Shown here: positions 17,201 through 58,000 of the stretch, in pieces
How positions within the stretch are numbered: position 1 is the first letter of the stretch
Layout of the letters: every line of letters starts with the position of its first letter
Source of the DNA: Mytilus californianus
Taxonomy: Eukaryota
Assembly: GCF_021869535.1 (NCBI RefSeq)
Contig: NW_026262581.1
Coordinates: 112,654,001-112,718,000, forward strand
Length of the DNA stretch: 64,000 bases
Direction: 5' to 3'
Made by a program: the position numbers and the translations under genes
Notes under the pieces: generated by a model
Databases searched by the model: none
Seen by the model: the letters and a program-made list of their open reading frames with translations, nothing else
What the model was told of the DNA's origin: nothing

Positions 17201-20200
17201 AATGAATTCTACAAGTGAGTGCGATTCAGACCCATTTATACGAGTAGAAACTGTACTGCGGAAGAGTCAACAGTATGGAAATCTTAGCAATAAAACACTA
17301 ACAAAAGGTAGTAGCGAAAACATCGCAGATACCTACAAGCAACCACCTTGTCAACGCTTATACAGTAAAGACAGGAAAAGCGAATTTAACTCAATTTTAA
17401 ATTTAGAACGATCTGTTTTAAAGTTGGCCAAACAGCACCATCAGAAAAATCAGTCTTTGTCCAACAAGAAGTATTCTGAAGGTCAGCTTAAACCTAAACT
17501 TCCTAACATTCACGATGGCAAGGTATCAACTCGAAGTACAGGTAAAGGAAAACAGTCAAAGAATCATAGAAATATCTTGGATAGGTGAGTGGACGTTTAG
17601 AATTGTAATATAATAATATTCTATTTTGAGATTTCTATTTTCATCTTTGTAGGTTGATATTTCGAAAAAGATAAATGAGTATTTCTAGGTTAAGAAATAA
17701 ATTTCAAGTCCTCGGAATGCATTGTGTGTTCGTACTGGCCGACAAAGGAATACACAAATGTGGTAGTGGTATGACGTAAATACAGCACGGGAGTTCTTAA
17801 ACATGAAACTATAATTCTTGTACATTCAAGGTCGTGTGCTCCAGGGAAAGTCAAATAGTAGAAAATAATTCAGTTTTCAGTTTGAGGCCTCCATTATGTA
17901 TCTGAAGGTTCCTACATATATTTACGTTTGTTTGTTGGTGTTTAATACCACTTAGGTAGCACGCCACAGTTAGGTGTGTAGTTTCGCATTTTGGACCCTG
18001 TGGATTTTTCAAATATGATAGCTAGTGTAGAATAAAATTTCATTTTTGGATAGCTGAAGATTAAAATAGCCTTCATAGTGGGTTTATAGGAACATCAAGA
18101 TTATGTAATGTATTTAATATGGGCTGTTTTCTGTATGACAGTCCGTATTTTCATATCCATACCAAATATTGGTTCGGCAATTATTGTAATGTTTTTTTCC
18201 AACTTTATGTCGCACGAACTTTGCAATTAAATTTTACGAAAAAATGAGGCGAAAGACACCCATTTTTTATTTGATCATTTGGTAGATTAATATCAACAGT
18301 TTCTGAAAAGGTATCACTGAAAGGCATTGAAATTCTAGTTTGAACCAAATCGTGGGGGAATATGTGACTTTTTTACCCCCCTTTTTGTAATATTTTATGG
18401 TAAATAAATGCAGAATGTTGCCATGGATACACAAAAAAGGAATTATATTTCACCATTTTAACTTTTAAAAACCAAATCTATGGAAGATACTGATTACATA
18501 CATATGCACATGTATAACACAAACAGTTAGGTTAATGTATTAGAAAGCCAGGAATAGAAGATGATAAAACATTTTGTGGTTCAATTTTAATGTTTTTTTC
18601 TAACTGTGGAGTGCTACCTTAACGTTTATGTTACATTGGTTCAATCATGTCGGCCAGCTTTTGTTTGTGAAGAGAACCACTTTGGTATCCTTCGCCTCTC
18701 TTTATAGAACTGATATTAATCACAGTTTATTGCTAAACTCAGTAAAGATCCGCTTAAATTCCATGTAATAGAAAAATCTAATTTTAAGAATTAAAATTTA
18801 GTTTTGTAAATTAAATACTCACCTTCATAAATTTAGATATCAGTCCACTCGCTGCATTATTCAACCGGAAACCAGCCAGAAAAAAGAACCATACCACTGT
18901 GACCACTCCCACCTGACGCATACGCGTCATAAACCTTCATCATTTGTTTCTTGAACTGACAGACACTAAGGGGGATGGGGACGGGGGGTTTAGGGGGGGG
19001 TCGGGACCTCTGATTTATGAAGGTGAGTATTTAATTTACAAAACTACATCAAATACCTCACCTTCATAAATTTAGATAAACAGAATTTAACGAAGCGCTG
19101 AACCCCCCTCACTAGGAGGAGGAAAAACAACCTGTTGAGCAGCAACTAAGGGTCATAAAGAATAGAGGTTGTCACAATGATGAGGCATAGAGCGTAAATA
19201 CTGGTTATAAAAGGCACTATCTGACCTCCAAAAACCATCTGACATGATTTTCGATATAGAGGAGGAATTAAATATATTCCAAAGAGAGACTAAGGCTCTT
19301 AACTTGATGTTTAGCTAAAACTTCAGACAAGCAGACTTATAGGCCAACATGACAGTATTGCAAATCCAGGTAGAAATGGTTTTAGCAGAAATGTCAGAAA
19401 TTCCTTTTTTAATAGGAATGAACAACCTAGAAGAACCAACAGGTCTTAATTGTGCTGACGAGGCTAGGTACAAAAGCAAAGTTCTCATAGGACATTCGTA
19501 TGGAATGGGGGAAACGTCAATCTCCAAGTTGCAATTCAGACTGGTGGCAAAAAGATCTACTAGTATATGAGAACGATCCCAACGAAGAGTGATCTCCTGA
19601 AACACTGATTGATGAAGTTCCAAATTCGGTGTTCACTGGAACACGTGAACGAGGAAGAGCATCAGACAGAAGATTTTGACTGCCTGGAACATGTCTCACT
19701 GACAAGATTATATCGAGACTGTCACACAGAAGAAGAATTTCCTTCCACAGAAGATACAGAGAAAAGGAATGAGTCCCCCTTGATTCTGAAGCCACTGCTG
19801 TGGAGTTGTCCGTGGCAACCAGAAGTGACTGACCCTGAATCCCAGCCTGAAAATGAAGGAGAGAAAGTGACACAGCTCTCATCTCTAGAAGATTGATGTG
19901 TTCTTCAAACTGAGCACCTGACCAAAGACCTGAAGCTATTTTGCTCTCTAGATAAGCTCCCTAACCCATCAAGCTCGAATCTGTGAACAAAGATAGAATG
20001 GGGTCTTGAGGATACAACAAAACTCCCTTCAGAAGGTGTTTCTCCTGAAGCCACCACTGAAGATATGGTAACATTCGAGGAAGAATTAGAACAAGTGCCT
20101 CCCACAGATGAGAAATTGGGTGCCAAAACTCCGTCAGATACCACTGGATTGGACGAATGTGTAGACGTCCTAGTGGAATGACGCCTTTGATTGAAATCAA

Positions 20201-23200
20201 GAAACTCACCAGCTGAAGAAATTGACAAGCTGGGACAGTTGAAAACTGCATTAAAGCACTGACTAACTTATATACCTTGATTAACGATTACAACTCTGAA
20301 ATTTGGTTTATGGATAATTTTCAGTCAGCTTTTAGGGCATCTAATAGAGCTGCTGTAAATAATACTTTTTGTGATACTCTTGCATTAGCAGAAAAATATC
20401 CTTTAGAGAAGGTTCATTCTAAATTTTGTAAAGCAGTATTAGGACTGAAAAAGACAGCCACTAACATAGGTGCTAGATCAGAATTAGGTAGATTTTCTTT
20501 GGACTCTTATATAAAAACTCAAACACTCATGTATTTTTATAGAATAAACTGTAATTATATTAATCCCCTGGTTAAAGAATCTCTACAAACAAACATAAAT
20601 TTACATTCCGCAGGAATTTATTCTTGGTACTCATTTGCAGATACAATTTTTAAAGATATGAAAATAAACCCAGAAAATTAATCTAATATTAATGTACCTT
20701 TTAAACAATAAAAAAACGTGTTAAAATGTAATATTAAAAAGTGTGTTTCAGAGGAATATGAAAAAACTACTTTAAATAAACTTTCAAAATTGGATACCTC
20801 ATCCAAACTTTGTCTCTATGGGAAATTAAAAACTAATTGTCAGTCTGAGGAATATTTAAATTGCAATAATTTTATACATAGGCAGTTTCTCTCAAAATTT
20901 AGACTCAGTGATCATTCCCTAGGCATTGAATTGGGAAGGTACAGAAACATTCCAAGAGCACAAAGATTATGTAAAAAATGTGGAGTCCTAGATGACGAAT
21001 TTCATTTCTTTTTGTATTGTAACATTAACATATCATTGCGTTCCAATTTTGTTGCTTATCTAAAAGACTATGTACCATTATTTCAACATCTTGATGCATT
21101 TAATAAACTAAAACACATTCTAAACCCCATCCCTGAACTTATTTGTCATATTGGAGTCTTTATTAAGCAGTCTTTAGAACTGAGGGGGTCAGACCCATGT
21201 CAGACAAGCTTATGATTGTGTTTTTTACATAAATTTAAAATTGAAGTCTTAAAATATGTTCTATTATTGTCGAGCCTGCGACTTTTGTCGCAGAAAGCTC
21301 GACATAGGGATAGTGATCCGGCGGCGGCGGCTACGGCGGCGGCGGCGTTAGCTAACTTCTTAAAAGCTTTATATTTTAGAAGGTGGAAGGTCTGGATGCT
21401 TCATACTTTGTATATGGATGCCTCATGTTACGAAGTTTCCGTCAGTCACATGTCCAATGTCCTTGACCTCATTTTCATGGTTCAGTGACTACTTGAAAAA
21501 AAAGTTAAGATTTTTTGTAATGTTAGATTCTCTCTTATTATAAGTAATAGGATAACTATATTTGGTATGTGCGTACCTTGCAAGGTCCTCATGCCCGTCA
21601 GACAGTTTTCACTTGACCTCGACCTCATTTCATGGATCAGTGAACAAGGTTAAGTTTTGGTGGTCAAGTCCATATCTCAGATACTATAAGCAATAGGTCT
21701 AGTATATTCGGTGTGTGGAAGGACAGTAAGGTGTACATGTCCAACTGGCAGGTGTCATCTGACCTTGACCTCATTTTCATGGTTCAGTGGTTATAGTTAA
21801 GTTTTTGTGTTTTGGTCTGTTTTTCTTATACTGTATGCCATAGGTCTACTATATTTGGTGTATGGAATGATTGTAAGGTGTACATGTCTAGCGGGCAGGT
21901 GTCATCTGACCTTGACCTCAGTTTCAAGGTTCAGTGGTCAAAGTTAAGTTTTTGAGTTTTGGTCTTTTATTCTAATACTATATGCAATAGTTCAACTATA
22001 TTTGGTATGTGCGTACCTTGCAAGGTCCTCATGCCCGTCAGACAGTTTTCACTTTACCTTGACCTCATTTCATGGATCAGTGAACAAGGTTAAGTTTTGG
22101 TGGTCAAGTCCATATCTCATATACTATAAGCAATAGGTCTAGTATATTTGGTGTATGGAAGGACTGTAAGGTGTACATGTCCAACTGGCAGGTGTCATCT
22201 GACCTTGACCTCATTTTCATGGTTCAGTGGTTATAGTTAAGTTTTTGTGTTTTGGTCTGTTTTTCTTATACTGTATGCCATAGGTCTACTATATTTGGTG
22301 TATGGAATGATTGTAAGGTGTACATGTCTAGCGGACAGGTGTCATCTGACCTTGACCTCATTTTCATGGTTCAGTGGTCAAAGTTAAGTTTTTTGAGTTT
22401 TGGTCTTTTTTTCTAATACTATATGCAATAGTTCAACTATATTTGGTGTATGGAAATATTTTATGATCTATTTGGCAGTCACGCAGGTTTTATTTGACCT
22501 TGACCTCATTTTCAAGGTTCATTGCTCAGTGTTAAGTTTTTGTGTTTTGGTCTGTTTTTCTTAAACTATAAGCAATAGGTCAACTATATTTGTTGTATGG
22601 AAGAATTGTTAGCTGTACATGCCTGCCTAGCATGGTTCACCTGACCTTGACCTCATTTTCATGGTTCATTGGTCAATGTTAAGGTTACTTGGTTAATGTT
22701 AAGTTTATGTGACAGTTGTAATAAAGCTTTATATTTAGGACTATCAACATAATATCAATGATTAGTAAAGAAGGCGAGACATTTCAGCGTGTGCACTCTT
22801 GTATTGTATTGTATTACATTGTATTGCATTGTATTTTAAATGTATAATTGTTTGTATTGCTTGACCCTTATGGGTGTAATTTTGCAATAAAGATTATTAT
22901 TATCTTCTCTTCTGGAGGAAGAACTAGACCCATATCCGTCTGAAAATGTTCTCCCAGGAAAATAAAATTCTGACTGGGAATTATATCTGATTTTCCCCAT
23001 GAAATAAAAAACCCAGTTTCAGGAGTAATTGGATAGCCAAATTGCTGTGTTCCTCCAGAAGAGAATCGTCTAGGTAGGAGTGAATGAGTACCGCCTGGAT
23101 TGAAGATAAGACACCACAGTCTGAAAAATCCTGGTAAAAACTAGGGGAGCAGTAGAAAGGCCAAAGGTAGCAATACACAGTAAGAAGTTTAGTTTCGCAT

Positions 23201-26200
23201 TATGGCCATGGTGAATTTTTTAAATATGAAAGTTTTTGTACAATAAAATTAATTTTTAGATAGTTGAAGAATAATATAGCCTTCGAAGTGGGTTTATATG
23301 AACATTTAGATTGTTTTAGCATGTTTTATAGGCCATTTTTCTGTTTGACAATCCGTATTTTCCTATCCGTACCGCCCATAGGTCCAGAAATTATTGTAGT
23401 GTTTATCAACAAAGATTTTACGCTCGATCTTTTCAATTCAATTTTATGGAAAAACGAGCAGAAAGGCATATGAATATTTTTGGACCTCTTGATAGATAAA
23501 TGTCTATGGTTTCAGGAAAGGTATCACTCTAATTGATAGAAATTTTACTTTGGATCAAGTTTTGGAGACTTTTGTGACATTTTCACCCCCCTTTTTGCAA
23601 TATTTTGTATCAAATAAATGCAGATTGTTGCCATGGTTACACCAAAAAGAGATTATATTTCACCTTTTTAACTAATGAAAATAAAATCTATGGAAGATGC
23701 TCTTTCCAGAAATATACACATACATAACACAAATAGTAAGCCTTATTTATTAGATAGGAAGGAAAAGAGGGTGGTTAAAAATTATGAGTGTCAATTTTAA
23801 GATTTTTTCCTAACTGTGTATTGCTACCAAAAAGCATAGCCTTGAAATTGTACAATTTGTCTGCCCAAACCAGTCTCAGGAAATGACGAAACTTGGGAGA
23901 AATCGGGATGTGAAAATAAGCATCCATCAAATCTAGAGAGGTCGTCCAAATTCCTTAATGAAGTGTCGACTTGATTGATCTGTTGGTTTCCATTTTGAAA
24001 TGTAGGACCACCAGATACTGATTCAGAACAGAAAGGTCTAGAACCGGTCTCATTTTCCCGTTCTTCTTGGATAATAAAACCCTAGATGAAAAGGAGGATT
24101 TACCTCCTCCAACACACCCTTCTGAACTAGAATGTTCACTTCATCTTCCTGTACCAAGTCCGGAATATGACAGTTGTTGTCCATTCGTTTGATGTGTTTG
24201 TGCTTTTGATTTTGCCATTTAATTAGGGACTTTCCGTTTTGAATTTTCCTCGGAGTTCAGTATTTTTGTGATTTAACTTTTTGCAACAACTGATTCTTTT
24301 GAGAATCCTTTGTCACTGACAGATTGATTGAAATATGAGACTGTTCCAAAAACGGAAGCTCCAATCCCCCCGTAAAATCGAAAGCACCACTTGTCTGAAG
24401 TTATCAGAGACCAATGATATAGAAAGTGGGAAAGCCTGCTTCCAACTGGAAGATGAGAAAGAGGAGTTGTATAATGTTCCTCTTCCAGTGGGGATGGATT
24501 TAACGGCGGGGACAACACATCACTTACCCTGCTTCTTACCCTTTACAACTTTGGCTTTCTTGCCACCTGAAAGGTTAGGACAAGAGACAGCCGATCTCTT
24601 CATAGACTGTGAAGAAGAAGAGGAAGAAGAAGCCCTGGGCTGATGAGAGGAAGAAGGCTTGGGCTGATGAGAGGAAGAAGGTTTGTTAATCTTAGTTGTC
24701 TTGACAATTCATTTTCCATCCGTGACCTTAACATCCACCTTGACAACAGGAGGAGCCTTATTCACCTCCTCCTGTAGCTGATCAAAGGAAACAGAGAACA
24801 ACTTGTCCTAAGACAGAGAAGACCTTAGAAGACTCTCCTGGAAAGCTTCAGAGACAGTCGATGTAGCAAGAATCTCCTGTCTCTTAGCAAGAATAAAATT
24901 GGCCAAGGTGTCAAGAATAAGGAATTGAGAAATTCCAAGACTCTTGTCTACCTGTAGAAGCAAAGACTTCAAGTCTGAAAATTCCACCCCTGTGTCCTTT
25001 AAAAGAGACCAAGCTGCCGCCAAATAGTGTTCAGCTGTCTCAAGAACATAAGTTAGAAACCTCAGATTATTCTCTGATTTTACATATGAATACTGAGAAA
25101 GTCTGAGGCCGTTCACAGGTTTCGAACCCAGTAATCTAGAAAAAAAACCTTTTCAAAAATTGGAGCAGACATACCCAAGAAAAATCCATGAATCTTGGAT
25201 CTGGTTTTCCCTGAATAATAGGCAGGTCCGAAACCAGAGAACTTACTATCACCAGGTGTTAGCATGGTTCTCAGCCAAAGACGAGTTAACAAAAGCCAAA
25301 GCTGTTGTGAAATGACCCGACTCTGGAAAAGAATGATACCCTTTAAATCTGGCTTGACTAAACAAGAGCAAGCCAAAAAACCTGAATGGACATTAGAAAC
25401 CCTTGGTGGAGTATACATGGGCATATCCGACAAATCCCTACGAATGGAACAAATTAGACTCCTAAGACATTCTGAGGAGTTGCCTGAAGAAGGCTCCTTA
25501 GTATCCATAGCATCTTTCTCTGTGCTCCCAACACTGTCATTATCAGATGAAGCACATTGGTCTTCAAGAAAGTTAAGTTCTTGTCTTCTTGGAGCTGAGG
25601 AAACAGAATCATCTTCCACCAGATGTCTAGAAAGTGTGGGAGGATCCTATGGAGGATCCTGAGACAGACCCTTAAACTCCATAAGGGCAAGCCTGTTACC
25701 AAACTCAATGAATTTTGCATTAACAGATGCTTGCATGTTATGGATAGAAGTGGTTAGAGTCTTTATCTCATACTTAAAAGATGATGATTCTGGACTGCTT
25801 TCCACGGGATCCCTGACCAGACCAGACTGACTGAGCCGAATACGGATCGAAGGGCTGAGGATAAGGAGGCAAGGTGGGCATACCCATAGCCATGGGAGGG
25901 TAGGCAAAATTTATAGGCCACCTAGTCCTGGAAAAGGGGTCACTCCTGATACCAACTGGAAGCGTCTCCTGCATACTTGTGCAAGAAACAGGAAACATTG
26001 GTATCTCTTTAGGCCTGGTTACGTTATGAGATACCCTACTAGGCCTAGATAACCTCAACTGACTAGCACCAGAAGTGAAGGGCAAAGTTCTAACAGGGCC
26101 TGGGTCCTGTTCCAGACTCACACTAGAAACACCAGGGATAAACTGAGATCCCATACCTCTATCCCAAAACTTATCCGAATGAGTGACCGAACGCCAAGAG

Positions 26201-29200
26201 GACAACAAACCACTTGTGTGTGTGTTTCACTTACCTCTTGCGTTGACTATATTGGTGTTTTATCAACCATTTATATTCAGATAAATTAAATTAAAATATA
26301 TAACCTGAATAATACCAATAATAATACAAATTAATATTACAAAATAATTAAAAGCTATAATTTTCTATCAAGAAAAACATGGTTTTGAAAAAAAACTTTA
26401 TTCCTTCTCAGACAAAGCGTGCAGCATACACCATGGAACCGGACAAAATGATAAAAGGTTTATGGCGCGCATGCGTTAGGTGGGAGAGGTTGTCACAGGG
26501 GTATGGTTCTTTTTTTCTGGCTGGTTTCCGGCTGAAAAATGCAGCGAGTGAACTGATATCTAAATTTATGAAGGTTAGGTATTTAATGTAATAAAAATTT
26601 AATAACATTGTTAATTTGAAATTTTTACTTTAGATTATCAAGTGTTCTCTAGTTATACTGCGAAAATGTACAAAGTTAACGGATATGAAATACAATAATT
26701 GTCCTTTTTCTTGATTTGGATATTTCAGTTTCACACAGGAAACTCTTTACAAAATGTCTGCTGTTGAACTGATAGTCCCCGAGGATATGATCAGCTATGT
26801 ACAAATGCTGCGGTACCGACATGATTTATAACAACTTTCTTAAAATCCAGATGTCTATTGTCCATATATTGTGAACTTCTCAAACCTCTTTTCCAACTTA
26901 GTTTATTTGGCATCTTCTGCAGGAACGAACAAAAATGAATAGCAAAATCCAGTTAAGTTTTTAATATTCTGAAACTTAAAATGCATTTAAATTTCATATA
27001 TATAAGTCCTGCCATGCTCCGAAACTTTTCCAGGTGCACAGGTTTGTCTGTACTCAGAGTGAAATTTGTGGTGTACGGCCTTATTTGCTAAAAGGTTATG
27101 ATGAACCTTAAGTAACTAATGTTCCAACTACCACAGGTAAAGTTTACTGTAGGTGGATTTGTATAACTCCTTTTCATGTCCCTTATGTCATATATAACTC
27201 CTCGACTCTCAATTGTTTGGGTTTAAGCGTTGTAAGTGTACAAAAAAATGATTCAATTTTAGGTTTGTAAATCCTTTGAACGTCCAGAACGTTGAGGGAA
27301 GCAATAGTCCTTACCATAAGGATAACAATGCAGTCCTGGTTACAACGATCCATCGACAGAGGAAGGAGAATTCTGTTTTAAAGAATGATAAAATGAAAAT
27401 GGAAAAACGTTCACAAAGTCGACCCATTTCAAAGAAGCTGAATAATTCACAAGGTAACTTGAGAAATTGGTACTTTTCACATACAATAAAAACGTAAAAG
27501 ATACAAAAGCAGATAACTAAATTAAGGCGACAGTAGTTTATCGATGTTCAAATCTCGTAAATCGATAAGGAAGAGACAAATCAAGGTAACAAACATAAAC
27601 GGAGGGAATCGCATTATGTTCCAAAGGAGCGAGACCGGGTGCGTCGACAGAGTAAGTGTCTCCCGATATGCATACAAAATCCGCCATACGAGTTCACACT
27701 AGGTACAAATGTCACAATCGGAAACAAATGGTAAAATTACAGTTCAGACTTTTATACTGGTATCTAAAAATCTAACACCACGAAAACATGTCGCTAGTTA
27801 ATGCATTTACAATCAGCAATGGAAAATGGCTCTTCCGTATACCAGATAGAAAATCTGAACTCAAACAACTATGTACCTGATTAAGTCCAGTACTTCAGTA
27901 TAAGTAATGTATCCTGTTCAGACATCCACCAGTAAACCAGTTTTGATCAAAAACAGTAATTTTGATCTGAACGTTCTTAAATGACTAAACAATAAACTAT
28001 TAAGTCATTATCTGTCTTTCAGTCTATTTTCAAACTTATCCGTTGCGGTAAATTCCGTACTGTTCAGACAATTCGCTTGCAACTAAGATATGTTCTGTCT
28101 ATGATCATGCTGTTCAGTAGTTGTTATCTACCTGTGCACATCAACATCATACTGAATTGTCTAAAAGTCACTGAACAGTTCTGAATTGACTGCAAGCGTA
28201 TTATCTGAGCAGTATTTAATTTACCGCAGCGGATAAGTCTGAACATTGACTGAAAACTGAACAATTATTGCTTTGGGCGTTTCCGATGAAGGTATATGCA
28301 AAAAGAAAACGCTTCAAACGCATGTAATTTGTAAAATTTTATTTTCATTTTTATAGCTAGTGTTTAGTAGTAACCACAATACTTTATGTCAATTATCAAG
28401 CAAGGTATTAAGTTAAACCCTAAAAAAAAAGACCACTAAAGAATAAAGTCGAATGATATAATGATATAATGTCTAAATATCAATTCTTTTTAATACTAAA
28501 CTTTGCGACGATACAAATCTAACGAAGCATAGTGAAATATCTGGGGGTTATAAGATTGATAAACTGTTAAATTGCCAATGCACTCACCAATAAAATCAGA
28601 CTTAACGCAAAACTTCCTTAATGAAACTCAAAGAAGTAATTACCATGCAGATCACTGGACATGATGATGAGGATGATGATGGATGGCTGCTTAACGTCCA
28701 GCGGCAAATTAATATGCATAATTCAGGACGAGAACATGTTAATGTAATATGAGTATTTACCTTACTTTGTACTAGACCGACACGCAGATTTTAACGTACT
28801 ATAGTTCACGAGGTAACAGTCCGCAGGAAGACATGTCACCTTTCCCGGACACATTATTCTGACTCCGAGACGACCAGTCTTTGCTCTTACTCCGTAATGC
28901 CACGTGCTTAGCAGAGAAGCAGCAAATACCCTTTTTAAAGTCTTTTGTTTGACGCGGCCGGGGTTCGAACCTACGACCTCCGCACTCGAGGCGAACACGC
29001 TACCACGAGACCACCGAGGCGGTCACTGGACATGATATCGAGGTTACGTTATCACCTTGAGTTATTCTTTGGATACTAGTAGTTGATATCTAAAAATTAA
29101 CATGTTTATATAAAGTGACATTGTAATACTAGTATTACATAACCTTAACATTAAAAACATTGACCTGAAATTTAACCATGGCATTCAAATGAAACTATCC

Positions 29201-32200
29201 TCTGGACATTTGGATAATATCTTAATGTATTCCGCCGAGAAGTTAAATTTTTATATCACGTCAGTTGTACGCAAATCTTCTATAACTTGGCAAATGAAAT
29301 TTTAACCATGATCAATGAAGCATAGAATTTTTATAAGAAATATTAAATGGTGAAAATATAGTGTGATATTAAAAAGTTGATTGATAGCGTTTGATTTCGT
29401 CAGTTTATAAACTTCCCCTTTTTGAATTTGCCTTGGAGTTCGGTATTATTGTTATATTTTTTACCTATCTTAAAATTGACCACCGCCTACTTTTTGTTAA
29501 GAATTCAATGGAACACTCACTTCAAATACAAATATAGTTAAAAAGAAATGTTTAGTTTCTCGTAACATTTCTGAAAACCTCTTTAGTCAGTATTTTGACT
29601 GGCATGAAATTACGGATATTGTTTGTTTGAAATTTGCTTTTGCTAAATTTTTAAAATAATATGACTTAAAATATATAGATCAATCATGCACATCTCTGAC
29701 TTCATTTATAGTTTTGTGATTCATTATTCTATTGTAGTGAAACTTCTCCATTGATTTCAAAGAAGGATATATGTACCTACGTTCTATTCTACATAGCTAT
29801 ATAACTATCTTGTGTTCCATATCAATGCTAAAATTAAATGACATTTTTAAAGAGGCAGCCAGCGATAGCAAGTCTCGAAAAATTAGTTCCATTGGTTCAT
29901 AAACTGAGAACATGTTTGCCAAATAATGAGTATGTATTTGCTTCACGAACACGTAGCAGTAAATCGAAGTAAAACGTGTCAATTTGCTGCGTTTTAAATT
30001 GGTTTCATCTGGAAATCCCATCGCCAAAAATTTAAACTATTAACCCCTTAAAAGGACCTTAAATGTAATTTTTCTTTATTTGATAACAAACGATCTAGCA
30101 GGACAAACAGTACGATATATGATACTTCAATTGCGCTCATCCTTGTTTTATTACGTTACATGTTATCCTTTTAGAAAAATCTATACAAGAAAGCAAACCT
30201 GCTGAAACAGATCTATCAATGTTGACACTAAATGAACTTTTGCAAACAATGCCTGGAAACAAAATGAAAAATTTCATCCAAAAAGTGACGAAGAAAATAA
30301 CTTGTAATCAATCGGATCAAGATCTAGGAAAAGAATTACCTGCATTAGACGTGAAGGTATGCAAAGCGTTCAAATAAAATGTATTAGATTTAAAGTTACA
30401 GGTGATCTTTGACAGACGTAATTAGATTTAAATTGGATGTCATATGGGTGAATTTGGGCGATTTTGAACCGTAGGCTGAATTGTCCATAGCAGTTATAAA
30501 GCTACAGGTGAAGTTTCAAAGAATTATTGTATAACATGTAAGGCAACATGTGATCTTAAGACAGATTTGCCAGTTTTAGATATAAAGCCTCAGGTGACCT
30601 TGGACCGAATGACCTGCTTTCAGGTGACAATTGACAACCTTACCGGTTTTTGAGGTAGAGCTACATGAGATATAAGACAGAATAACCTATTGCAGGTGTA
30701 AAAATACGGATGACCTTGGACAGAACCAACCATAATTACCTGTATAATATGTAAAGCTACAATTGACCTTGGAAAGCATTATTGTGTTAGATATAAATCT
30801 ATAGTTGACCTTAGGGAGCATTATTACATAAGATGTAAAGCTACAGGTAACATTAGACACACTCACCTGTATTAGATGTAAAAAGGTTAGCATTAGACGG
30901 TTACTTTTATTAGATGTAAAGCTACTATAATCAGGAGTCGGTAATTCAGTGTTTGTTGTTATATATCATTTTTTTTCCTTTATTATTTTGTACAGAAATC
31001 AGTCAATTAGTTTTCGCGTTTGAATTGTATTATATTGTCATTTCGGGGCCATTTATCGCTTGATATGGGATATGGATTTTGCTGATCGTTGAGGGCCGTA
31101 CGGTGACCTATAATTGTTAACTTCTCAGTCATTTTGTCTTTTGTGGAGAGTTGTCTCATTTGCAATCAAACGACATCCTTTTTAGTTTTATATTAGACGG
31201 AATGTCCTGTATTAGATGAAGCTACAGGTGACCTTAGAAAGTACTATTAACTTATATGTAAAGCTACAGGTGAATTTAGACAGAACAAGAAAGTATGTAG
31301 TTTTTCCCACTCGTAATTCAAAGTAGTACCAGTTAACAAAAAGTAGGTGTCTTTAGGATTGTAAAGTGTCAACACGTTATTACTCATCACCGTAAAGCTG
31401 CCTGACAAAATATGAGTCAATTTGCTCAGTAATACTCGAGAAATATGTAATGCAAATTTTCAGTACATTTACACCCCAGTTCTATTGTTATACTTCATAG
31501 TTTCTATTTCTGAAACAAGTGTAAATTGAATAGCTCTATTGTTACGATTAACAATGGATCTTGACCACAGGGTGTAACGAGCGGGGTTTCTGGAAACCCC
31601 TGCTTCTACATCCCGAAAACACATTCCATTGTTATTCATAACAATAGAAATTGATTATTCTTAAATAGCATGAACATAAGAAATTACTAAAAGTGTTCAC
31701 TACAAGTTGTTTCAAGAAATTAAAAAAAAAAACATATTTTAGGAAATTCTAATTGCGAAAAAAATATTGATCATCTGTTTTGAATAACAAAAAAAAAAAC
31801 CCTTCAAATACTCCTTTGCTTGAAGCTAAATTTTTTGATCCCAGTCATACAGCGGCGGATCCAAAAAGGAGGGGGGGGTTCAGTGGTTTAGAACCCCCCT
31901 TTTTTGGACGATCAATGCATTTGAATGGGGACATATATTTGGAACCCCCCTTTATTCTTGGTTGGGAACCCCTTTAAAATAAATTGCTTTGCTGGGGCGC
32001 AGCTTGATACAACCGCAGAGGTCGAACCTTGAACAGTTGGGGCAAGTATGGACACAACATTCAAGATTGATACAGCTCTGAATTTGGATTGTTATTAAAT
32101 ATTTGACACAGCATAGGTTTCTGACACAGAAAGAATGTGGTCTAAGAACTTGAATTTTTTTAATTTACCTATTATGGTCCAATGTCCAAAATCAAAATAC

Positions 32201-49000: not shown

Positions 49001-52000
49001 CACATTACGGATTTACCTAGAAATCTGAATGTAAAAAATTTATTTACAAAATCATCCAAACCCCCACTTCCCCAAAATAAAAAAGCACTCCTCTAGGCTG
49101 CCAACACAATAATTACAAGCGAAGAAATGATTTGAAAATATTATTTAAAAAAAAATATAAGGAGATGAGGTATGATTGCCAATGAGACAACTATCCACCA
49201 AAGTTCAAATAAAGTGGATGCAAGCTTGCAATTATAGACAACCGTACGGCCTTCAACAATGAGAACAACCCATACCGTACAGTCGGCTATATAACGCCCG
49301 ACATGAAAAATATGACACAATTCAATTGAGAAAACTAACGGCCTAATTTATAACAAAACAATTCACGAAAAACAAATATGACAGACATGAATCAATAACA
49401 ACCACTGAACTACAGGTTTTTGATTTGTTTATCATTTTTTCTGTATACAGTATCTTTCTATCCATTATTGTTCTCAAGATAATATCAAAACCAGTACAAT
49501 TTAAGAAAAAAACAACACAATTGCACAATAAAGTCAATAATTCCTATAAGGATTCAATTGATGATTTCAGTCATAATGTTTTTTGTGGATCTTGTTTTCA
49601 CTATTGCTGATCATTCTTCCTCCATGCATTTACAGTAAACATATATATTTGTCTATCTTTGATTGTTTTCAAGATAAAAACCTAAAATTTTAACTCTTGT
49701 CCTATTAGTAGTGCTTATGGGTGTAACCATTTCAGCATTGTTGTAGCATAAGTTACATATCAATAATTCAAGGGCAATAACTCCTGTAAGTTGTCATTTG
49801 ACGGTTCTAGTCATTTTTCATTTTATGTTTATTGAACACGGATATTGCAGATCTTTATTGTTATTTAAGTGTCTGTTTATCTATTATACATTTAAATTTG
49901 GGTAAAAGTTCATCAGTTAAAGGTAACAACTCCTATAGAGAGTTAATAGGTGGTTTGAGTGAAATTGGCATTTTTGTAATCTATCTTGTATAAAATATCT
50001 GTATTTCTTTTATAGATTTTCAAGATAATAGTCAAAAATGCAAAACATGGGTAAAATAGTCTTTTTAGGTGGTTTTGGTCAATTGAAAATAATTTCTGTA
50101 TCAGAAAATCTGTCAAATTATTAAAACTATTTCAACTTGAATACTAATCAATAAGTTCAAGCATCATACATGTATGTAACCATTAAAATCTATTCTAAAT
50201 CAGCAAAAGTCGTTTTCCTACATGTATGGTAAGTAAATCACTTTATAACACCAAATTTTTAATTTATAAATGCTACATGTACTCTACTTGTTTGGACTTC
50301 ATCTCTTTGCTTAAACTGAAAATGCAATTGTTTAAAATTGATAGTAAAAACTCATTTGCCAGGAAAGTCTTTTATATTAATTTCACAACTCCTGTAATAA
50401 CCTGTGATATTTAATATTATTTGGTTTTGCTCCATACCTGGGTTATAAATGAATAAAAGTTTTGTAAAATATTGACATCATTTGACATCTGAAGTATTCC
50501 TTGTTATTTATAACTAATATTGCTGATATTTGCCTACTGACAACAAATTATAAAATATGGTAAATTATAGATCAAACTTAAAATATATATGTGTCCCAAA
50601 GAAGAGTTAACTTCAAAGATGTTAACAAAGAATGGTTGTGAAATGTGAAGTTATGTGTGAAGAAAACAACACTTTAAAATATCATTATGTGATTAGAAAA
50701 AACACCAGGATAAAAATTACAAGTCAATTAATATGTTCACTCTATTAATAATAAACATCTTACCCACTGCAAAACAGTAAGTGACTAACATGTTGTAACA
50801 GTATTGCACATCTTAAATCATCTATTGTCTGTTTTTCATTAACTTGTAACCCAACATTTAATAAAACTTGTCTTTTATCATCACTTTCAGATCTTCTTGA
50901 CAAGAAATCACTATTCAATACTGCTGATAAAACATTTCTGTACAGTGTCTCTCGGTGATAATGGAATGCCAGAAAGCAATAGGTAGGGGAGGTCACTTTC
51001 GATACCTTCCATTTTTGTTCAGATAGTATCTGAAGAAGTTCATCTTTTATTGCCTGTTTTTCCTGAAAAAATAATGAAAATTATGGCATCAATACAAAGG
51101 TAAAGGGCATTCCACAAAAAAGTCTATTCAAATACACATAAAATTCATTCATATATCAAATAGCTGATTTAGCTATCAGATGAGAAGCACATGGTTATTA
51201 ACCTACAATTACTGTGGATTCATTATGTATTCGTTGGATACCAATTTATGTGGATTTCGTGGATAATGGTAAACCACAATTAAATGTTCAACGAAGTACA
51301 AATTTACTATAGGTTTGTATGCTGATTTTGCCAAAACCACAAAATCAAATATCTATGAAACTACAACTTTTCTTTATTCCACAAAAATTAATATTGGTAT
51401 CCATTAAAAAATAAATGAATCCATACTTTGCCCTTTTTTGCAGTATATTTTTAGTAGAAGAAATATTACATGTTATATTTGTGCAAAAAGAACCCTTGAA
51501 TCAACAACAGTTATTTTTCATGTTTTTGGGTTTATGAAATTTTGCATTATCAAATAAACCTAAAAAATTGCCTGAGAGTTTTTAAAGCTCACCTACTAGT
51601 CCATTAAGAACAGAAATGTACGTTATCTCTGTATTAATGACAGTGGTTCAGTGATTCCCTAAATTATCAACCCACAAATAATTTTTCCCACAAAATCCGC
51701 CTCTGAATGAATAAACAAGAGTGCACACGCTGAAATGTCTCACCTGCTTTACTTATCATGATTGAAGTTATGTTGACAGTCTCCTATATATGAAGGTTTT
51801 ACTACAAAAAATGAAAACAACACTTTCATGCGTCCGAAGTGCTTTTCTGGATTTACCTTCTTCTAACAGGAACGCTGAATGCCGAATATTTGAAAGCCAT
51901 GGATGTTTAAGAACTGAAGCAATTGTAGGTCTATATACAAGTATCATATACATTTTTTTTTGTACACTTAACATTATATCAATAATGCATAAACATGAGT

Positions 52001-55000
52001 TCAAGGTCAGATGAACCATGCAAGACATACATGTACACCTTATAATCAATCCATACACCAAATTTAATGGCCCTATTATTTACATGTTTAATATCTGTGA
52101 AACCACAAAAATTAATAAAATTTACAAGTTAATGCCATCCAGAACTAATAGGTAGATTTTCATCCAGATTGTTGAAAAATTAAGGGCGGGTTGGAGGATT
52201 TTATTTTTAATTTCCTCAGAAATCCTTTTGTAGTGTGTTCTTCATATGCAAGGGTAATAATAGCATATATCATGTATATACAAATGTATAAGGAATTCTA
52301 CATAATTTTTCAAATTCTTAAATAGACATTCTGATTTGCAACCACTGTTCTACATGAAACCTATTTTCAGTAAATAGAAAAAACATGGAGAATTGCTCTC
52401 TTTTAGACTACCTACATCAAATTTATTTTGCTTTCTAAGCTATGATTTATAGTGCCCATAAAATGAAGCATATGCATTGGTATGCAACACAAATATTATG
52501 AGTACAGAGTGAAATGAAAACTCAATCTGTGTTGAAAATACTAGGATTGATGCTTTAAAGATTCTTATGCAAGGTGCAAATATAATTACAATGTAAAACA
52601 TGAACTTAACTAAAAAAAATAAGTTGTTTAATGACTCTATTGAGTGGCTGAGGACAGATGGTGTTTGCTATATGTCAACAAAAAAAGACAGCCTTGGGGT
52701 AAATCTAAGGCTTTCATGTCGATCCAGCCCCCAAGTCGATCCTGCCCAAGAAGATTTGGCCCGCATTTAAAGACGATCTGGCCCCAATTTAAAAAATATT
52801 TAACAAAGAATAAAAATGATATATTTCTAACATGTAGTTCATAAATATTAATGAATTGTATGAACAATAACAAATATTGGGTATGTAAAATTATGATGAA
52901 ATAATTGGGGAATGTGTCCATGGGACACATATGATGCCCCCGCTTGCATATGTTATAAAGGGACATAACTCAAGAATGGGAAAAGTGACAATACCAAAAT
53001 TCATACTTGATCTGAGTTTTGTGGTAATAAGCATTTTGTATAAGTTTCATAACATTTGGTTGAGGCAAACTTAAGTAAGATAACGGAAATGAAAAAATTC
53101 AACAATTTTTCCATTTGTAAAGGGGCATAACTCTAGAACAGTAAAAGTGACGCCACCCAAATTCAAACTTGATCTGTGTTTTGTGGTAATAAGCATTGTG
53201 TATAATATTCATAACATTTGTTTGAGGCAAACTTAAGTAAGAGAACGGAAACAAAAAATTCAGCAATTTTTCCATTTGTAAAGGGGTATAACTCTAGAAA
53301 GGTGAAAGTGAAGCCACCCAAATTCAAACTTGATCTGTGATTTGTGGTAATAAGCATTGTGTATAACTTTCAAAATATTTGGTTGAGGCAAACTAAAGTT
53401 AGAGAATGGAAACCAATTTCGGGTAAAACTTAGTGCCCCCTCTGCTACAGTGGGGGCATAAAAACATATATTACAGAAGTAAGTGCAATCATTAGTCGAC
53501 ATTAATCTGCAATTTTTCTTATGACTTTGATTTGAATAATCTTTTCAACTGGTGTAATAACAATTGGTTAATAAATACAAGCTGATCCCCAAGCTAATGC
53601 ACAAAAACTTTTTCTTTAAAAGTCAAAACCAAATTACACGGTTTTCTTATAATTAACATTTGTGACATACCTTGACACCGCCTATTACTCGTAACCCAAA
53701 TATATTATGCCCTTCCAGTAATCAATCTCTTTTCTTGGAAGATAGTGCTGTCTTAATAGACATGATAAAGCAACAGAATATCGACTTGTGGTATTTTGGT
53801 TAAATTACTTGAGAATGTGAAAACTGAAATTTGCAACGGGCAGATTTGAATGAAACTAAATTATTAGCATGTTTCCAGTAACGGAAATGAACAAAATCAT
53901 ATATAAAATCATAAACGTTTAATCAAAGCTCTGTAAGCGCTATAGGCAGTTAACCAAAAACCAAGGCAAACGTAATTATGAAAACTGGCAGTGTTGCTTC
54001 ATTTTTTTAAAAAGATTTTAAAGAACAAACATTAAACATTCGTATATTGTACATGTATGTTTATTTAATGAACTGATTATTAAGGCAAATTAATTAATAT
54101 TTTATCAAGGTTTTCAAAAGCAATGCATATATCAATGTATATTTTTAATGATGAGTTTGCAGTGGTACAAGTTCGCAATGATTGCAGTTGTTCTAGTTGG
54201 TAGTTAACGTTGGTACCAGTTGACTTTTAGTGGTACAAGGTGATGTAGTACGAGTTTGTAATAGTATGAATGGACTTGCTTCCCTGGCGTTTGGGTTCTA
54301 CAGTACAAAAGTTATGAGACACAAATCAGCCAAGGGTTTACTACTAAAGGGATCAAAGGTGAGGTCTGATTGACCTGTCCATAGTAAATGTAAATGATCC
54401 TTACCTTCACCAAGTCCATGATGTCACTCCATCCCAAGTTTGGAGTAAAATGACAGGTGATTATAAAACAGTTGGTCAAACATTCTTGGGCTTTACACTG
54501 CTTTGTAAGTTTTATATGTTTTCTTTAAAATGAGCCATAAATGAAAATTTTTATAGATATAGGAAGATGTGGTATGAGTGCCAATGAGACAACTTTCCAT
54601 CCATCCATAGGCCCAGAAATAATTCAAAAAATAAGTAAAGTAAAATTCAATTAACCTAGACTTATTTTGGCATCAATTAAATTTTATAATAAACAAGAAA
54701 TAATTGTAACAGGATGCTGTTACGAAGTCTTCCAAACAGAGCTCCCATAATTCGTCATTCCCATGGTCGCCTGACATTGGGCAAAGTCCAGTACAAATTG
54801 GTTAGGTCTAGTAAAGTGATGTGCATATGTGATCCCTAGGGGATTGACCCTGCATGTCATTCAAATCTTCTTGAAATGACAAACAGGAATAAATATGGTT
54901 TAGGGTTGGGTATCTCAATGTTTACAAGTTCTCAAAAAGGGGGGGGGGGAGTGATCCCCAGGGCACTTACCCTTTATTTCATTTGATTTAGTTTATTGTC

Positions 55001-58000
55001 CCGTACAAGAATACATATGGTTTCGGGGTTGGGATCTCAACCGTTTATAAGTTTTAAAAAATAAGGGGGGTGGGGGTGACCCCCGTGGACTCCCCCTATA
55101 TTTCATTTGATTTGTTTTATTGTCCCATAAATGAATATATATGGTTTAGGGGTGGGGATCTCAACCGTTTACAAGTTTTCAAAAATAAGGGGGATGGGGG
55201 TGACCCCAGGGACTCCCCTATATTTCATTTGATTTGTTATCTTGTCCCAAACAAGAATATATATGGTTTCGGGGTGGGGATCTCAACCGTTTACAAGTTT
55301 TCAAAAATAAGGGGGGTGGGGGTGACCCCCGTGGACTCCCCCTATATTTCATTTGATTTGTTTTATTGTCCCATATATGAATATATATGATTTACGGGTG
55401 GGGATCTCGACCGTTTACAAGTTTTCAAAAATAAGGGGGATAGGGATTTCGACCGTTTACAAGTTTTCAAAAAGAAGGGGGTGGGGGTGACCCCTGTGGA
55501 CTCCCCTATCTTTCATTTGATTTGTTTTACTGTTCCATACAAGAATATATATGCAGTAGGGGTGGGGATTTTGACCGTTTACAAGTTTCACAAACAGAAG
55601 GGGATGGGGTGACGCTGGGGATTCCCCCAAATTTTCATTTGATTTGTTTTATTGTCCCATACAAGTATGTATATGGTTTAGGGGTGGGGATCGCGACCGT
55701 TTACAAGATAAAAGCACATTTTCAAATTCAAGGGGTGGGATGACCCCCCAGGGACTCACCCTATATTTTATTTGATTTGTTCTATTGTCCTGTTATTATT
55801 ACTGAACACCGTGTGTGTCGATCACTTACTGTTTTCAAGTAATAGTCATTTGAAAATTGAAAAAAAAAAAAAATCCCATAGGGTTCTATAGTAAACCCCT
55901 CCCTTCTTTAGGACCCTCAGAATACCCCTAAGTAGACCCCCAAGGCACAAAAACCAAAGATTGATGGCTCCGCTAGACATGTTAGTCTAACATTTAATGA
56001 AACCCTAAGTAAATCTGACAAGCGGTCCGAGTTGTCTTCTTAGATAGTCCAAGTGGACTCGGTCCGACTTGTCTCGGGGACGAGTTGTCCACATTTCTTA
56101 AAACATCCCATCTTTGTCATTCATAAAACAACAACAACTTAATTTGGCAAGTTCAGTGATGAATGGAATAATTTAATAAAAGAAAGGAATTTAAATGTGC
56201 ATACATTTAATTGAAATTAATTGATTAATCACAATCTTCTTAAACGAAAAGATCTTCTTAAACGAAAAGAAGATCATGATAAACAAAACTTACTTTATAA
56301 CATCAGAATACTTACTAGCTTACGTTTCGTGTAAGTTATTAGTTAAAATTACAGCCAACTTATACTATGTATAACTTTATGTCCTTTATCATAGAGATTT
56401 GGTGTACATGAACAATATTCCTGTGCTGTTTGCCATTTGGGAAATGTAAACGACTTGTAATTAGAAATGATGGCGATGAAATATTTCATACAATTGTTCT
56501 TTGACATCTTAGCCAAAAGCACATGGGATAATAAACTACGTACGGATTTCTATTAAGCACTACTTCCTATGTGCAACTTCAAAAATTTTGGGTGGTTCAA
56601 CGATCATATAAGGTTTTACTGGTCATATTTTTTGTATTCCAGAATTGAAAGTATGAAAAAAGTGCCCAATTAGTTATTAATAACATATTAGCCAGCTAGA
56701 TAATAACAATAGCACTTTTTACACCATTCAGTGGGAAGAACACAAATCTAGGGTGGTAGCATATGACAGCTTAACTGCCTAAAAATCAAGGCAGGACCAT
56801 TTTAAAGGGGCAGGGATGGAAATGTATCAATTAATTTTAATTGGCCTTACCATGACAATTAGTTTAGGGTCATAGGAACCCTGCCAGACAGAAGTGTACA
56901 CCTTACAATCATTCCATTCACCAAATATAGATCTACTGCTCATTGTATCTGATAAACTGAAAAAAACACAAATACTTGAAATTGACCAATGAACCATGAA
57001 AATGAGGTCAACGTCATTTGAGCCCTGTGAGACAGATATATACTTTCAAAAATGCAATCATTCCATACACTAAATATAGATGACCTATTGCTCATAATTA
57101 CATTTGTAATATCAGATAAACTGACAAAACCTCAAAAACTTAATATTGACCAATGAACCATGAAAATGAGGTCAAGGCCATATATGCAACCTGCATGACA
57201 GACATGTACACCTTACATTCATTCAATAGACCGAATAAAATGGCCCTATTGCTTATAGTATCTGAGAAATAAATCTTAACAACAAATACTAAACTAAACT
57301 TGTCCAATGAAAAATGAAAAAGAGGTCAAGGTCATATGAAACCTGTGAGTCCAACATGTTTAATTTGCCTTACAATCATTCATACACCGAATATAATAGT
57401 TGACCTACATTATTGCTTATAGTATCCAAGATACTTAGTGAGAAATTCATGACCAAAGTTTGTGCCCAACAGTCGCTGAACTATGAAAATGAGGTCAAGG
57501 ACAATTAAACACAATGTATTACAGATTGAAACTTTGTAACATAAGGTATCTGCGTACAAGGTTTGAAGCATTCAGATCTTTTACCCACTAAAATATCAAG
57601 CTTTATAAAAATACAAAATACGGCATTGTTGCCACCGGAAATTTATATATTTCCTATATCTCGCATTATTTTCATTGCAGGAAGACAAAAATCAGTGTTG
57701 GTTTGTACAGATTGTTTTCTTCAAAACCGAACAAATTAAGAAGTAAACCAGCCACGGTCTGTAGGACATTTAGAGTTATGTTTAAAGACGGTCCGAGTTG
57801 TATTCATAGACAGTCCTAGTTATTTTACGGGTTGTCTTCGGTCGAGTTACCAGAAGAAGAGTTGTCTATTTTCCAGAACCGTACCTCTACTGAAACAGCT
57901 TTTACAAGACCTATTGGCATGGAAATGTCACCATCTCTCAGATCCCTGTTTCTTTTACAAAGTACAAGCCGTTGTACACACATATTATGTCTTTTCATAC

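What the first reader, a model, noticed from the sequence alone, without database searches (positions are those of the whole stretch)
18799..26590. DIRS1-type element whose ICR spells out the circle junction and predicts TSD-free insertion at TA
Seen in sequence: ITRs at 18799-18946 and 26444-26590, and an ICR whose halves match the two outer tips, joined at a shared TA (…ACAAAAC-TA-CATCAAATACC…). The element starts TAGTTTTG and ends …AATGTA, so the empty site reconstructs as TTAAAATT-TA-ATAAAAATTT with no duplication. Established knowledge: DIRS1 elements use the ICR to make a circular cDNA that the tyrosine recombinase integrates. Inference: the cis-architecture is retained although every ORF is dead, so an autonomous family with these termini may exist elsewhere in the genome.
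Basis: partly seen in the sequence, partly recalled or inferred. Interest (0 to 1): 0.72.

Follow-up and report, generated by a model that had tools for sequence, protein, structure and literature searches.

The report
Dead DIRS1-like retrotransposon, ends misplaced

Summary
Inverted terminal repeats sit at about 18802-18946 and 26444-26596. An internal complementary region (ICR) at 19013-19078 has two halves that match the two tips. The element lies on the minus strand and is a DIRS1-like retrotransposon. In 24 other genomic copies, the 23 nt left of 18799 are conserved. The right end runs to 26596. The family's ICR reads (sense) ...GTAATA-AAA-ATCAAATTTTTAGAATTAAAATTTAGTTTTG..., that is left ICR, a 3-bp junction, then the right ICR including the complement of a 26-nt right extension. 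The window copy has lost 31 nt from the ICR centre, and that loss creates the false TA junction. Two uninterrupted paralogues of the target repeat read ...GATAA|ATTT.... This places the insertion at 18775|18776 and 26596|26597, with no duplication. Left flanks carry (T)AAA(A), while right flanks are random. This is the published DIRS1-like architecture (Piednoël et al. 2011). The copy also carries three nested insertions and a roughly 918-nt deletion of most of the recombinase. No intact member of the same family was found. A sister family, 56% identical in RT, has long open frames and identical ITRs. The finding is ordinary and of low interest.

The parts
18773..18775 (.). Target-side AAA next to the element's 3' end. 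It is the counterpart of the element's own AAA at 26594-26596 (the shared junction trinucleotide).
   Evidence: Left flanks of 24 copies: position -3 is A in 83%, -2 in 96%, -1 in 63%. Paralogous empty sites read GATAA|ATTT.
18776..18801 (-).
   Evidence: Conserved as ATCAAATTTTTAGAATTAAAATTTAG in 24 copies, with unrelated sequence beyond it. Its complement lies inside the family ICR.
18802..18946 (-). Right (3') inverted terminal repeat. The outer ~18 nt are the divergent part and the rest is the conserved part.
   Evidence: Inverted-repeat pairs I1, I4 and I6; gapped alignment to 26446-26590.
19013..19078 (-). Truncated ICR. The right-ICR remnant is 19013-19046 and the left-ICR remnant is 19045-19078. 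A 31-nt deletion (TAATAAAAATCAAATTTTTAGAATTAAAATT in sense) lies at 19044/19047.
   Evidence: Pairs I2 and I3. A MAFFT alignment of 14 family ICRs shows the gap only in the window copy (raw view).
19315..19494 (-). C-terminal remnant of the tyrosine recombinase (CPMRTLLLYLASSA...). A ~918-nt deletion at 19494/19495 fuses it to the DLFA region.
   Evidence: ORF 19315-19623. Other copies carry about 918 extra nt here. Recombinase motifs are visible in family copies.
19495..20283 (-). RNase H / 'DLFATSLN' region of pol, in broken frames.
   Evidence: Aligns to L061-L065 at 83-87%; ORF fragments.
20284..22898 (+). Nested insertions. A young 5'-truncated LINE-like repeat occupies 20289-21267, followed by a 147-bp tandem array at 21554-22683.
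   Evidence: Absent from all five full copies. 98% identical copies with variable 5' starts and a common 3' end. TRF array.
22899..23165 (-). RT fragment (YLDD region).
   Evidence: ORF 22981-23178 contains SYLDD; aligns to family copies.
23166..23826 (.). Nested ~660-bp element with terminal inverted repeats (GGTAGCAATACACAGT...). It is 75% identical to a second copy at 17955-18620.
23827..24520 (-). RT N-terminal fragments (DAYFHIPI motif), interrupted by a 133-nt insert at 24148-24280.
   Evidence: The RVT_1 Pfam hit is on the homologous stretch of family copy L063.
24808..26208 (-). gag-like ORF1 region, in broken frames.
   Evidence: ORF fragments; aligns to family copies at 83-86%; no Pfam family.
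26444..26596 (-). Left (5') inverted terminal repeat. The element starts (sense) TTTTATTACATTAAATACC at 26596.
   Evidence: 23 independent right ends stop at ...AATGTAATAAAA and unrelated flanks follow.

Best explanation
The interval holds one old, immobile copy of a DIRS1-like (tyrosine-recombinase) retrotransposon family. It lies on the minus strand and spans 18776-26596. Its layout is left ITR, gag, RT/RNase H, recombinase, ICR, right ITR, then a 26-nt right extension. In intact family members the ICR carries the reverse complements of both termini, abutting at a 3-bp AAA junction. By the established model (Cappello 1985; Poulter & Goodwin 2005; Piednoël 2011; tested experimentally in Dictyostelium, PMC7192593), the ICR templates restoration of the cDNA ends into a junction-bearing intermediate. 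The recombinase then crosses that intermediate with a genomic site sharing the short junction motif, and no target-site duplication results. Shown here: the family's termini, its ICR, the one-sided (T)AAA(A) motif in the target, the paralogous empty site, and the damage to the window copy. Inferred from the literature: the circular or ICR-splinted intermediate and the recombinase step. After insertion the window copy lost the central 31 nt of its ICR (the junction plus the right-extension complement). It also lost about 918 nt of the recombinase gene and acquired three nested insertions.
For:: 24 copies share ATCAAATTTTTAGAATTAAAATT immediately left of TAGTTTTG, and the sequence beyond it is unrelated; right ends stop at ...AATGTAATAAAA (window 26596) in 23 copies; the family ICR contains ...CAAAACTAAATTTTAATTCTAAAAATTTGAT|TTTTATTACATT..., and the window lacks 31 of these nt; both flanks belong to one dispersed repeat. 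In the uninterrupted paralogue L067 the left-flank match ends at nt 130 and the right-flank match starts at nt 131; left-flank positions -5 to -1 are T 63%, A 63%, A 83%, A 96% (p=5e-11), A 63%, while right-flank positions are at background; the gag/RT/RH/YR order, an RVT_1 hit (1.6e-9), and the recombinase motifs RRRSEIHA, AHEVRA and FYNHYL. (PMC3266345): the published DIRS1-like scheme lITR-lICR-rICR-rITR-rE, with a 3-bp circular junction, the same trinucleotide at both ends, no TSD, right extensions of 9-75 bp, and junction AAA in AcDIRS2 and XtDIRS2/3; contigs from four runs (three studies) bridge 18594-18832, so the filled site is present in all of them.
Against: Pfam does not recognise the recombinase directly; the best hit is Phage_int_SAM_5 at E=0.25. 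No methyltransferase domain was detected. The ICR deletion could not be confirmed in independent individuals, because short-read contigs break at the palindrome. No true allelic empty site was available; the empty sites are paralogues 71-87% identical to the flanks. The copy census is capped by the tool at 40-140 scored hits.
Confidence: 0.93

Rival explanations
1. One reading: the element ends at 18799 and 26590, its ICR gives a true TA circle junction, and it inserted at a TA without duplication.
For: Within this one copy the two ICR halves meet at TA, and each half matches a tip.
Against: The 23 nt outside 18799 and the 6 nt outside 26590 are conserved family sequence. The family ICR contains them. 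The window copy itself still carries the right extension at 18776-18801. The paralogous empty site joins 18775 to 26597.
Confidence: 0.02
2. The conserved 23 nt are not part of the element. They are a preferred, repeated target sequence into which this family inserts site-specifically.
For: Tyrosine recombinases can be site-specific, and DIRS-1 of Dictyostelium prefers its own copies as targets (PMC7192593).
Against: The complement of the 23 nt lies inside the element's ICR, contiguous with the left-ICR half. Conservation stops abruptly after 23 nt plus the A-rich motif. The uninterrupted paralogues of the window's target lack the 23 nt.
Confidence: 0.02
3. The A-rich motif at both ends is a 3-4 bp target-site duplication made by staggered cleavage, not recombination at a shared motif.
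For: The filled site reads ...GAAAA|element...TAAAA|ATTT and the empty paralogue has a single GATAA. On its face that looks like a duplication.
Against: The ICR itself carries one AAAA between the two termini, so that copy belongs to the element. The right-end AAAA is essentially invariant, with 3 deviations in 23 copies. The left-flank motif varies (32 mismatches in 120 positions), and it does not co-vary with the right end in paired copies: left aaat, gaat or agaa against right ATAAAA.
Confidence: 0.03

Closest known systems
DIRS1-like superfamily as annotated by Piednoël et al. 2011 (PMC3266345), e.g. mollusc LgDIRS2 (5036 bp, conserved ITR 141, rE 46, ICR 46-67), and AcDIRS2 / XtDIRS2-3 (junction AAA)
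   Same: The scheme lITR-lICR-rICR-rITR-rE is the same. ITRs have a divergent outer part and a conserved inner part (about 18 + 127 nt here). There is a right extension only (26 nt, within the published 9-75 nt range). The ICR halves are about 40 + 60 nt, with a 3-bp junction (AAA, so TTT at both ends in sense). There is no TSD. Full copies are 4.5-4.9 kb (five fetched; other paired ends up to ~7 kb). ORF overlap is not obvious, as reported for mollusc elements.
   Different: The sequences could not be compared, because no Repbase or Dfam copy was at hand. The methyltransferase domain was not detected by Pfam. The target motif seems to extend to 5 nt (TAAAA) on one side only. The window copy is degraded.
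DIRS-1 of Dictyostelium discoideum (Cappello et al. 1985; Malicki et al. 2020, PMC7192593)
   Same: ITRs with non-identical outer tips. An ICR next to the right repeat that is complementary to both termini (33 + 55 nt there). The ICR was shown experimentally to be essential for retrotransposition. The same replication model applies.
   Different: DIRS-1 has ~330-bp repeats, overlapping YR and pol ORFs, junction TAA, and a preference for inserting into its own copies. Here the copies examined (24 left, 23 right ends) lie at different sites with unrelated flanking sequence, and the window copy sits in an unrelated dispersed repeat.
Sister DIRS1-like family in the same genome (example locus L068)
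   Same: The same architecture. Its termini and ICR are alignable (ATTCAAATTTTAAAG... against ATCAAATTTTTAGAA...). RT is 56% identical at the protein level, and pol is about 67% identical at the nucleotide level.
   Different: In L068 the ITRs are 132 nt and 100% identical, and the ORFs are 580, 795 and 975 aa. About 20 loci carry an 803-aa open frame with near-identical scores, so this family is apparently young. The window's family is 10-25% diverged and broken in every copy examined.

Membership tests
DIRS1-like superfamily (order DIRS) | Reverse transcriptase / RNase H of the Ty3-gypsy-related type | tested here: met
   RVT_1 at E=1.6e-9 on family copy L063:2462-3286. RVT_1 at 9.5e-18 plus weak RNase H hits on sister copy L068. 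The window fragments (DAYFHIPI, YLDD) align to these at 82-88% nt but are too short for Pfam on their own.
DIRS1-like superfamily (order DIRS) | Encodes a tyrosine recombinase (R...HxxR...Y) instead of a DDE integrase | tested here: inconclusive
   Motifs are seen in translations: RRRSEIHA, AHEVRA / AHDVRG, FYNHYL / FISHYL. The nearest named Atlas cluster is 'Phage integrase family', PF00589, score 0.98. Pfam gives only Phage_int_SAM_5 at E=0.25, and PDB sequence search finds nothing. In the window copy most of the gene is deleted.
DIRS1-like superfamily (order DIRS) | Inverted terminal repeats | tested here: met
   (about 140 nt, about 91% in the window). 132 nt at 100% in sister copy L068.
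DIRS1-like superfamily (order DIRS) | ICR just inside the 3' ITR, made of two halves complementary to the two termini, including a right extension | tested here: met
   Family copies. The window copy keeps both halves but lacks the central 31 nt.
DIRS1-like superfamily (order DIRS) | 3-bp circular junction, the same trinucleotide at both ends, no target-site duplication | tested here: met
   The ICR centre is GTAATA-AAA-ATCAAA. Flank statistics. The paralogous empty site is contiguous at 18775|26597.
DIRS1-like superfamily (order DIRS) | Methyltransferase-like domain after RNase H (distinguishes DIRS1/PAT from Ngaro/VIPER) | tested here: inconclusive
   No Pfam methyltransferase hit on family pieces or on the sister 795-aa ORF. 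A conserved 'IDLFATSLNHKLETYVSP...FPPF' region follows RNase H, but its identity was not established.
Ngaro / PAT-like YR retrotransposons | Split direct repeats (A1-B1 ... A2-B2) at the termini | tested here: not met
   The termini are inverted, not direct. No terminal direct-repeat family appears.

The most novel reading that the evidence does not exclude
In this family the homology between target and circle junction is one-sided and longer than the canonical trinucleotide: TAAAA on the right-extension side only, with nothing on the other side. If that holds on real filled/empty allele pairs of the young sister family, it would place the recombinase crossover at the edge of the junction motif rather than within a symmetric core, which would refine the DIRS integration model. 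Independent deletions at the palindromic ICR centre (window, L022, L006, L017) may also be a recurrent route by which copies lose mobility.
Probability: 0.3. Interest if true: 0.3.

Novelty: new member of a known kind. Interest (0 to 1): 0.12.

Why it matters
It matters little beyond annotation. The correct boundaries are 18776-26596. The element is a degraded member of a textbook DIRS1-like family, and the apparent TA junction is an artefact of reading one damaged copy. The case shows that a junction or target site should not be inferred from a single decayed copy's ICR. The genome also holds an apparently young sister family that would suit study of DIRS integration sites on real polymorphic insertions.

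Tried and rejected
1. Pfam on nine minus-strand ORF fragments of the window gave nothing useful. Longer pieces from other copies were needed.
2. A fuzzy-regex anchor search timed out and was replaced by blastn-short.
Only five same-family copies, one sister copy and two short paralogues were fetched, so the ORF survey of the family rests on those five plus the open-frame column.
4. PDB sequence search and Pfam at E<=10 did not recognise the recombinase. One reference had the wrong frame and was corrected.
5. I considered that L017, whose ICR stops exactly at the junction, marks an insertion into the ICR. Its downstream sequence is internal element sequence, so it is an internal deletion.
6. 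Read laying could not bridge the ICR palindrome, and it could not hold both ends within the 6,000-letter limit. It therefore gave no test of the ICR deletion or of an empty allele.
Only individual copies are described.
Full report
**Observation.** The repeat finder gives these inverted arms:
- 18818-18885 / 26511-26578 (68 nt, 94%)
- 18880-18906 / 26489-26515 (93%)
- 18902-18937 / 26455-26490 (89%)

A gapped alignment of the two ITRs runs about 140 nt at about 91% identity. The ICR is also real. 19013-19049 is complementary to 18796-18832 (37 nt, 97%), and 19045-19078 is complementary to 26557-26590 (34 nt, 94%). The two halves share TA at 19045-19046. All coding remnants lie on the minus strand. 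Reading the window from right to left gives 5' ITR, gag-like region, RT, RNase H, recombinase remnant, ICR, 3' ITR.

**The ends are wrong.** A search of the window's own 1.65-Gb genome with 18799-19100 returned 88 matches, a lower bound. When flanks were printed for the fetched loci, the 23 nt to the left of TAGTTTTG read ATCAAATTTTTAGAATTAAAATT in nearly every copy. Sequence further out was unrelated. The window has ATCTAATTTTAAGAATTAAAATT at 18776-18798. A search with the other end stopped at query position 217-220, which is window 26596-26599. In 23 independent copies the element ends ...AATGTAATAAAA and unrelated flanks follow. The element therefore spans 18776-26596.

**The TA junction is a deletion artefact.** In the other copies the ICR reads (window orientation) ...GGTGAGTATTTAATTTACAAAACTAAATTTTAATTCTAAAAATTTGAT|TTTTATTACATTAAATACC.... 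This is the reverse complement of the full left end, including the 23 nt, followed directly by the reverse complement of the full right end. A MAFFT alignment of 14 ICRs shows that the window copy alone lacks 31 nt (sense: TAATAAAAATCAAATTTTTAGAATTAAAATT). The deleted stretch is bounded by TA on both sides. The deletion removed the real junction and the complement of the terminal extension, and it fused the remaining stubs at TA. L022 and L006 carry different, independent deletions at the same palindromic centre. L017 has an internal deletion with one breakpoint exactly at the junction.

**Target site and the absence of a duplication.** Both flanks of the window copy belong to a dispersed repeat with 283 and 641 first-look candidates. 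Two uninterrupted paralogues were fetched.
- In L067 (reverse complement) the left-flank alignment, extrapolated to window 18775, ends at nt 130. The right-flank alignment starts at nt 131 with window 26597.
- The paralogues read ...AATGATAA|ATTTAAAAAC and ...ATAGATAA|ATTTTG. The window reads ...ATAGAAAA|[element]|ATTTAATAAC.

So nothing was duplicated or lost, and the empty site is not TTAAAATT-TA-ATAAAAATTT.

Across 24 left flanks, positions -5 to -1 are T 63%, A 63%, A 83%, A 96% and A 63%. The background A frequency is 31.5%, and p is 5e-11 at position -2. The 23 right flanks are at background. The motif matches the last bases of the other terminus (...GTAA-TAAAA).

The right-end AAAA is nearly invariant. 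The left-flank motif varies, and it does not co-vary with the right end in paired copies. [quoted passage not shown] That is what the literature model predicts, and it is not a TSD.

**What it is.** The family encodes the following:
- A gag-like ORF with no Pfam family.
- An RT: RVT_1 at E=1.6e-9 on L063.
- An RNase H region followed by a conserved 'IDLFATSLNHKLETYVSP...FPPF' stretch.
- A C-terminal tyrosine recombinase with RRRSEIHA, AHEVRA and FYNHYL motifs.

The recombinase of an intact sister copy has its nearest named Atlas cluster in 'Phage integrase family', PF00589, at score 0.98. The closest unnamed clusters are commonest in Mollusca and Chordata. Pfam and PDB sequence searches do not recognise it directly. 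The window copy carries the following damage:
- a ~918-nt deletion at 19494/19495 that removes most of the recombinase;
- a 661-nt TIR element at 23166-23826;
- a 133-nt insert at 24148-24280;
- a 2.6-kb composite insert at 20284-22898.

**Comparison with what is known.** Piednoël et al. 2011 (PMC3266345) describe DIRS1-like termini as lITR-lICR-rICR-rITR-rE. Their scheme includes a divergent and a conserved ITR part and a right extension of 9-75 bp that is complementary only to the right ICR. It also includes a 3-bp circular junction, the same trinucleotide at both ends, and integration by recombination with an identical trinucleotide without TSD. Junction AAA is listed for AcDIRS2 and XtDIRS2/3. 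Mollusc elements are 4.7-5.8 kb. The family here fits point by point:
- a right extension of 26 nt;
- a divergent ITR part of about 18 nt and a conserved part of about 127 nt;
- ICR halves of about 40 + 60 nt;
- junction AAA;
- full copies of 4.5-4.9 kb (the five fetched).

Malicki et al. 2020 (PMC7192593) showed in Dictyostelium that the ICR is essential for retrotransposition.

**Is there an autonomous relative?** All five fetched full-length copies of the same family are riddled with stops and frameshifts. In a six-frame protein search of the genome, every hit at 60% or higher RT identity had internal stops or an open frame of at most 477 aa. A sister family, 56% identical in RT, shows about 20 loci with an 803-aa open frame and near-identical scores. 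One example (L068) has ITRs of 132 nt at 100% identity, ORFs of 580, 795 and 975 aa, and a complete ICR with a right-extension complement. Its termini are homologous to those of the window's family but different in sequence. I describe it only.

**Population check.** Contigs from four runs of the same species label, from three studies, bridge the flank-to-element junction (18594-18832) with 0-2 differences. The insertion is therefore present in all of them, as expected for an old copy with about 9% ITR divergence. Contigs break at the ICR palindrome, so the deletion itself could not be confirmed independently.

**Verdict.** This is an ordinary, degraded DIRS1-like copy of a family that fits the published architecture. 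Interest is low.

Noticed in passing
window 17955-18620 and 23166-23826: Two copies (75% identical) of a ~660-bp non-coding element with ~20-bp terminal inverted repeats (GGTAGCA..CACAGTTAGG). The first copy is flanked by TTA on both sides, which looks like a MITE with a 3-bp duplication. One copy sits beside the DIRS copy and the other inside its RT.
   Followed up: partly
window 20289-21267 (+): A young, abundant repeat nested in the DIRS copy. It has at least 2,842 first-look candidates in the genome, with top hits 97-98% identical. The 5' starts vary and the 3' end is common, at window ~21267. That is the pattern of a 5'-truncated non-LTR retrotransposon. Pfam finds nothing in its two ORF fragments.
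   Followed up: partly
window 21554-22683; also 51715-52077 and 56849-57604: A 147-bp tandem repeat array (7.3 units, with higher-order periods of 293 and 440) lies inside the DIRS copy next to the LINE-like fragment. Related arrays occur elsewhere in the window.
   Followed up: no
L068 (G000:C1:121474400-121481400) and about 20 other loci listed: A sister DIRS1-like family with 100% identical 132-nt ITRs, a complete ICR, ORFs of 580, 795 and 975 aa, and many loci with an 803-aa open frame and near-identical scores. It is apparently young.
   Followed up: partly
window 18709-18775 plus 26597-26755; paralogues L066, L067: The DIRS copy inserted into a member of another dispersed repeat family (hundreds of candidates). 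Uninterrupted paralogues serve as empty-site proxies.
   Followed up: yes
L022, L006, L017, L014 (ICR region): Independent deletions (L022 about 30 nt, L006 about 10 nt, L017 about 900 nt starting exactly at the junction) and one foreign insertion (L014), all centred on the palindromic ICR. The ICR centre seems fragile.
   Followed up: partly
window 24148-24280: A 133-nt insert that is absent from all other family copies. It has a 76% relative at window 29387-29455.
   Followed up: no
runs X7-X18 (organisms B, C, D): Other species labels hold about 13-17% of the sampled 31-mers of 18560-19360. This probably comes from the abundant TIR element rather than from the DIRS copy.
   Followed up: no
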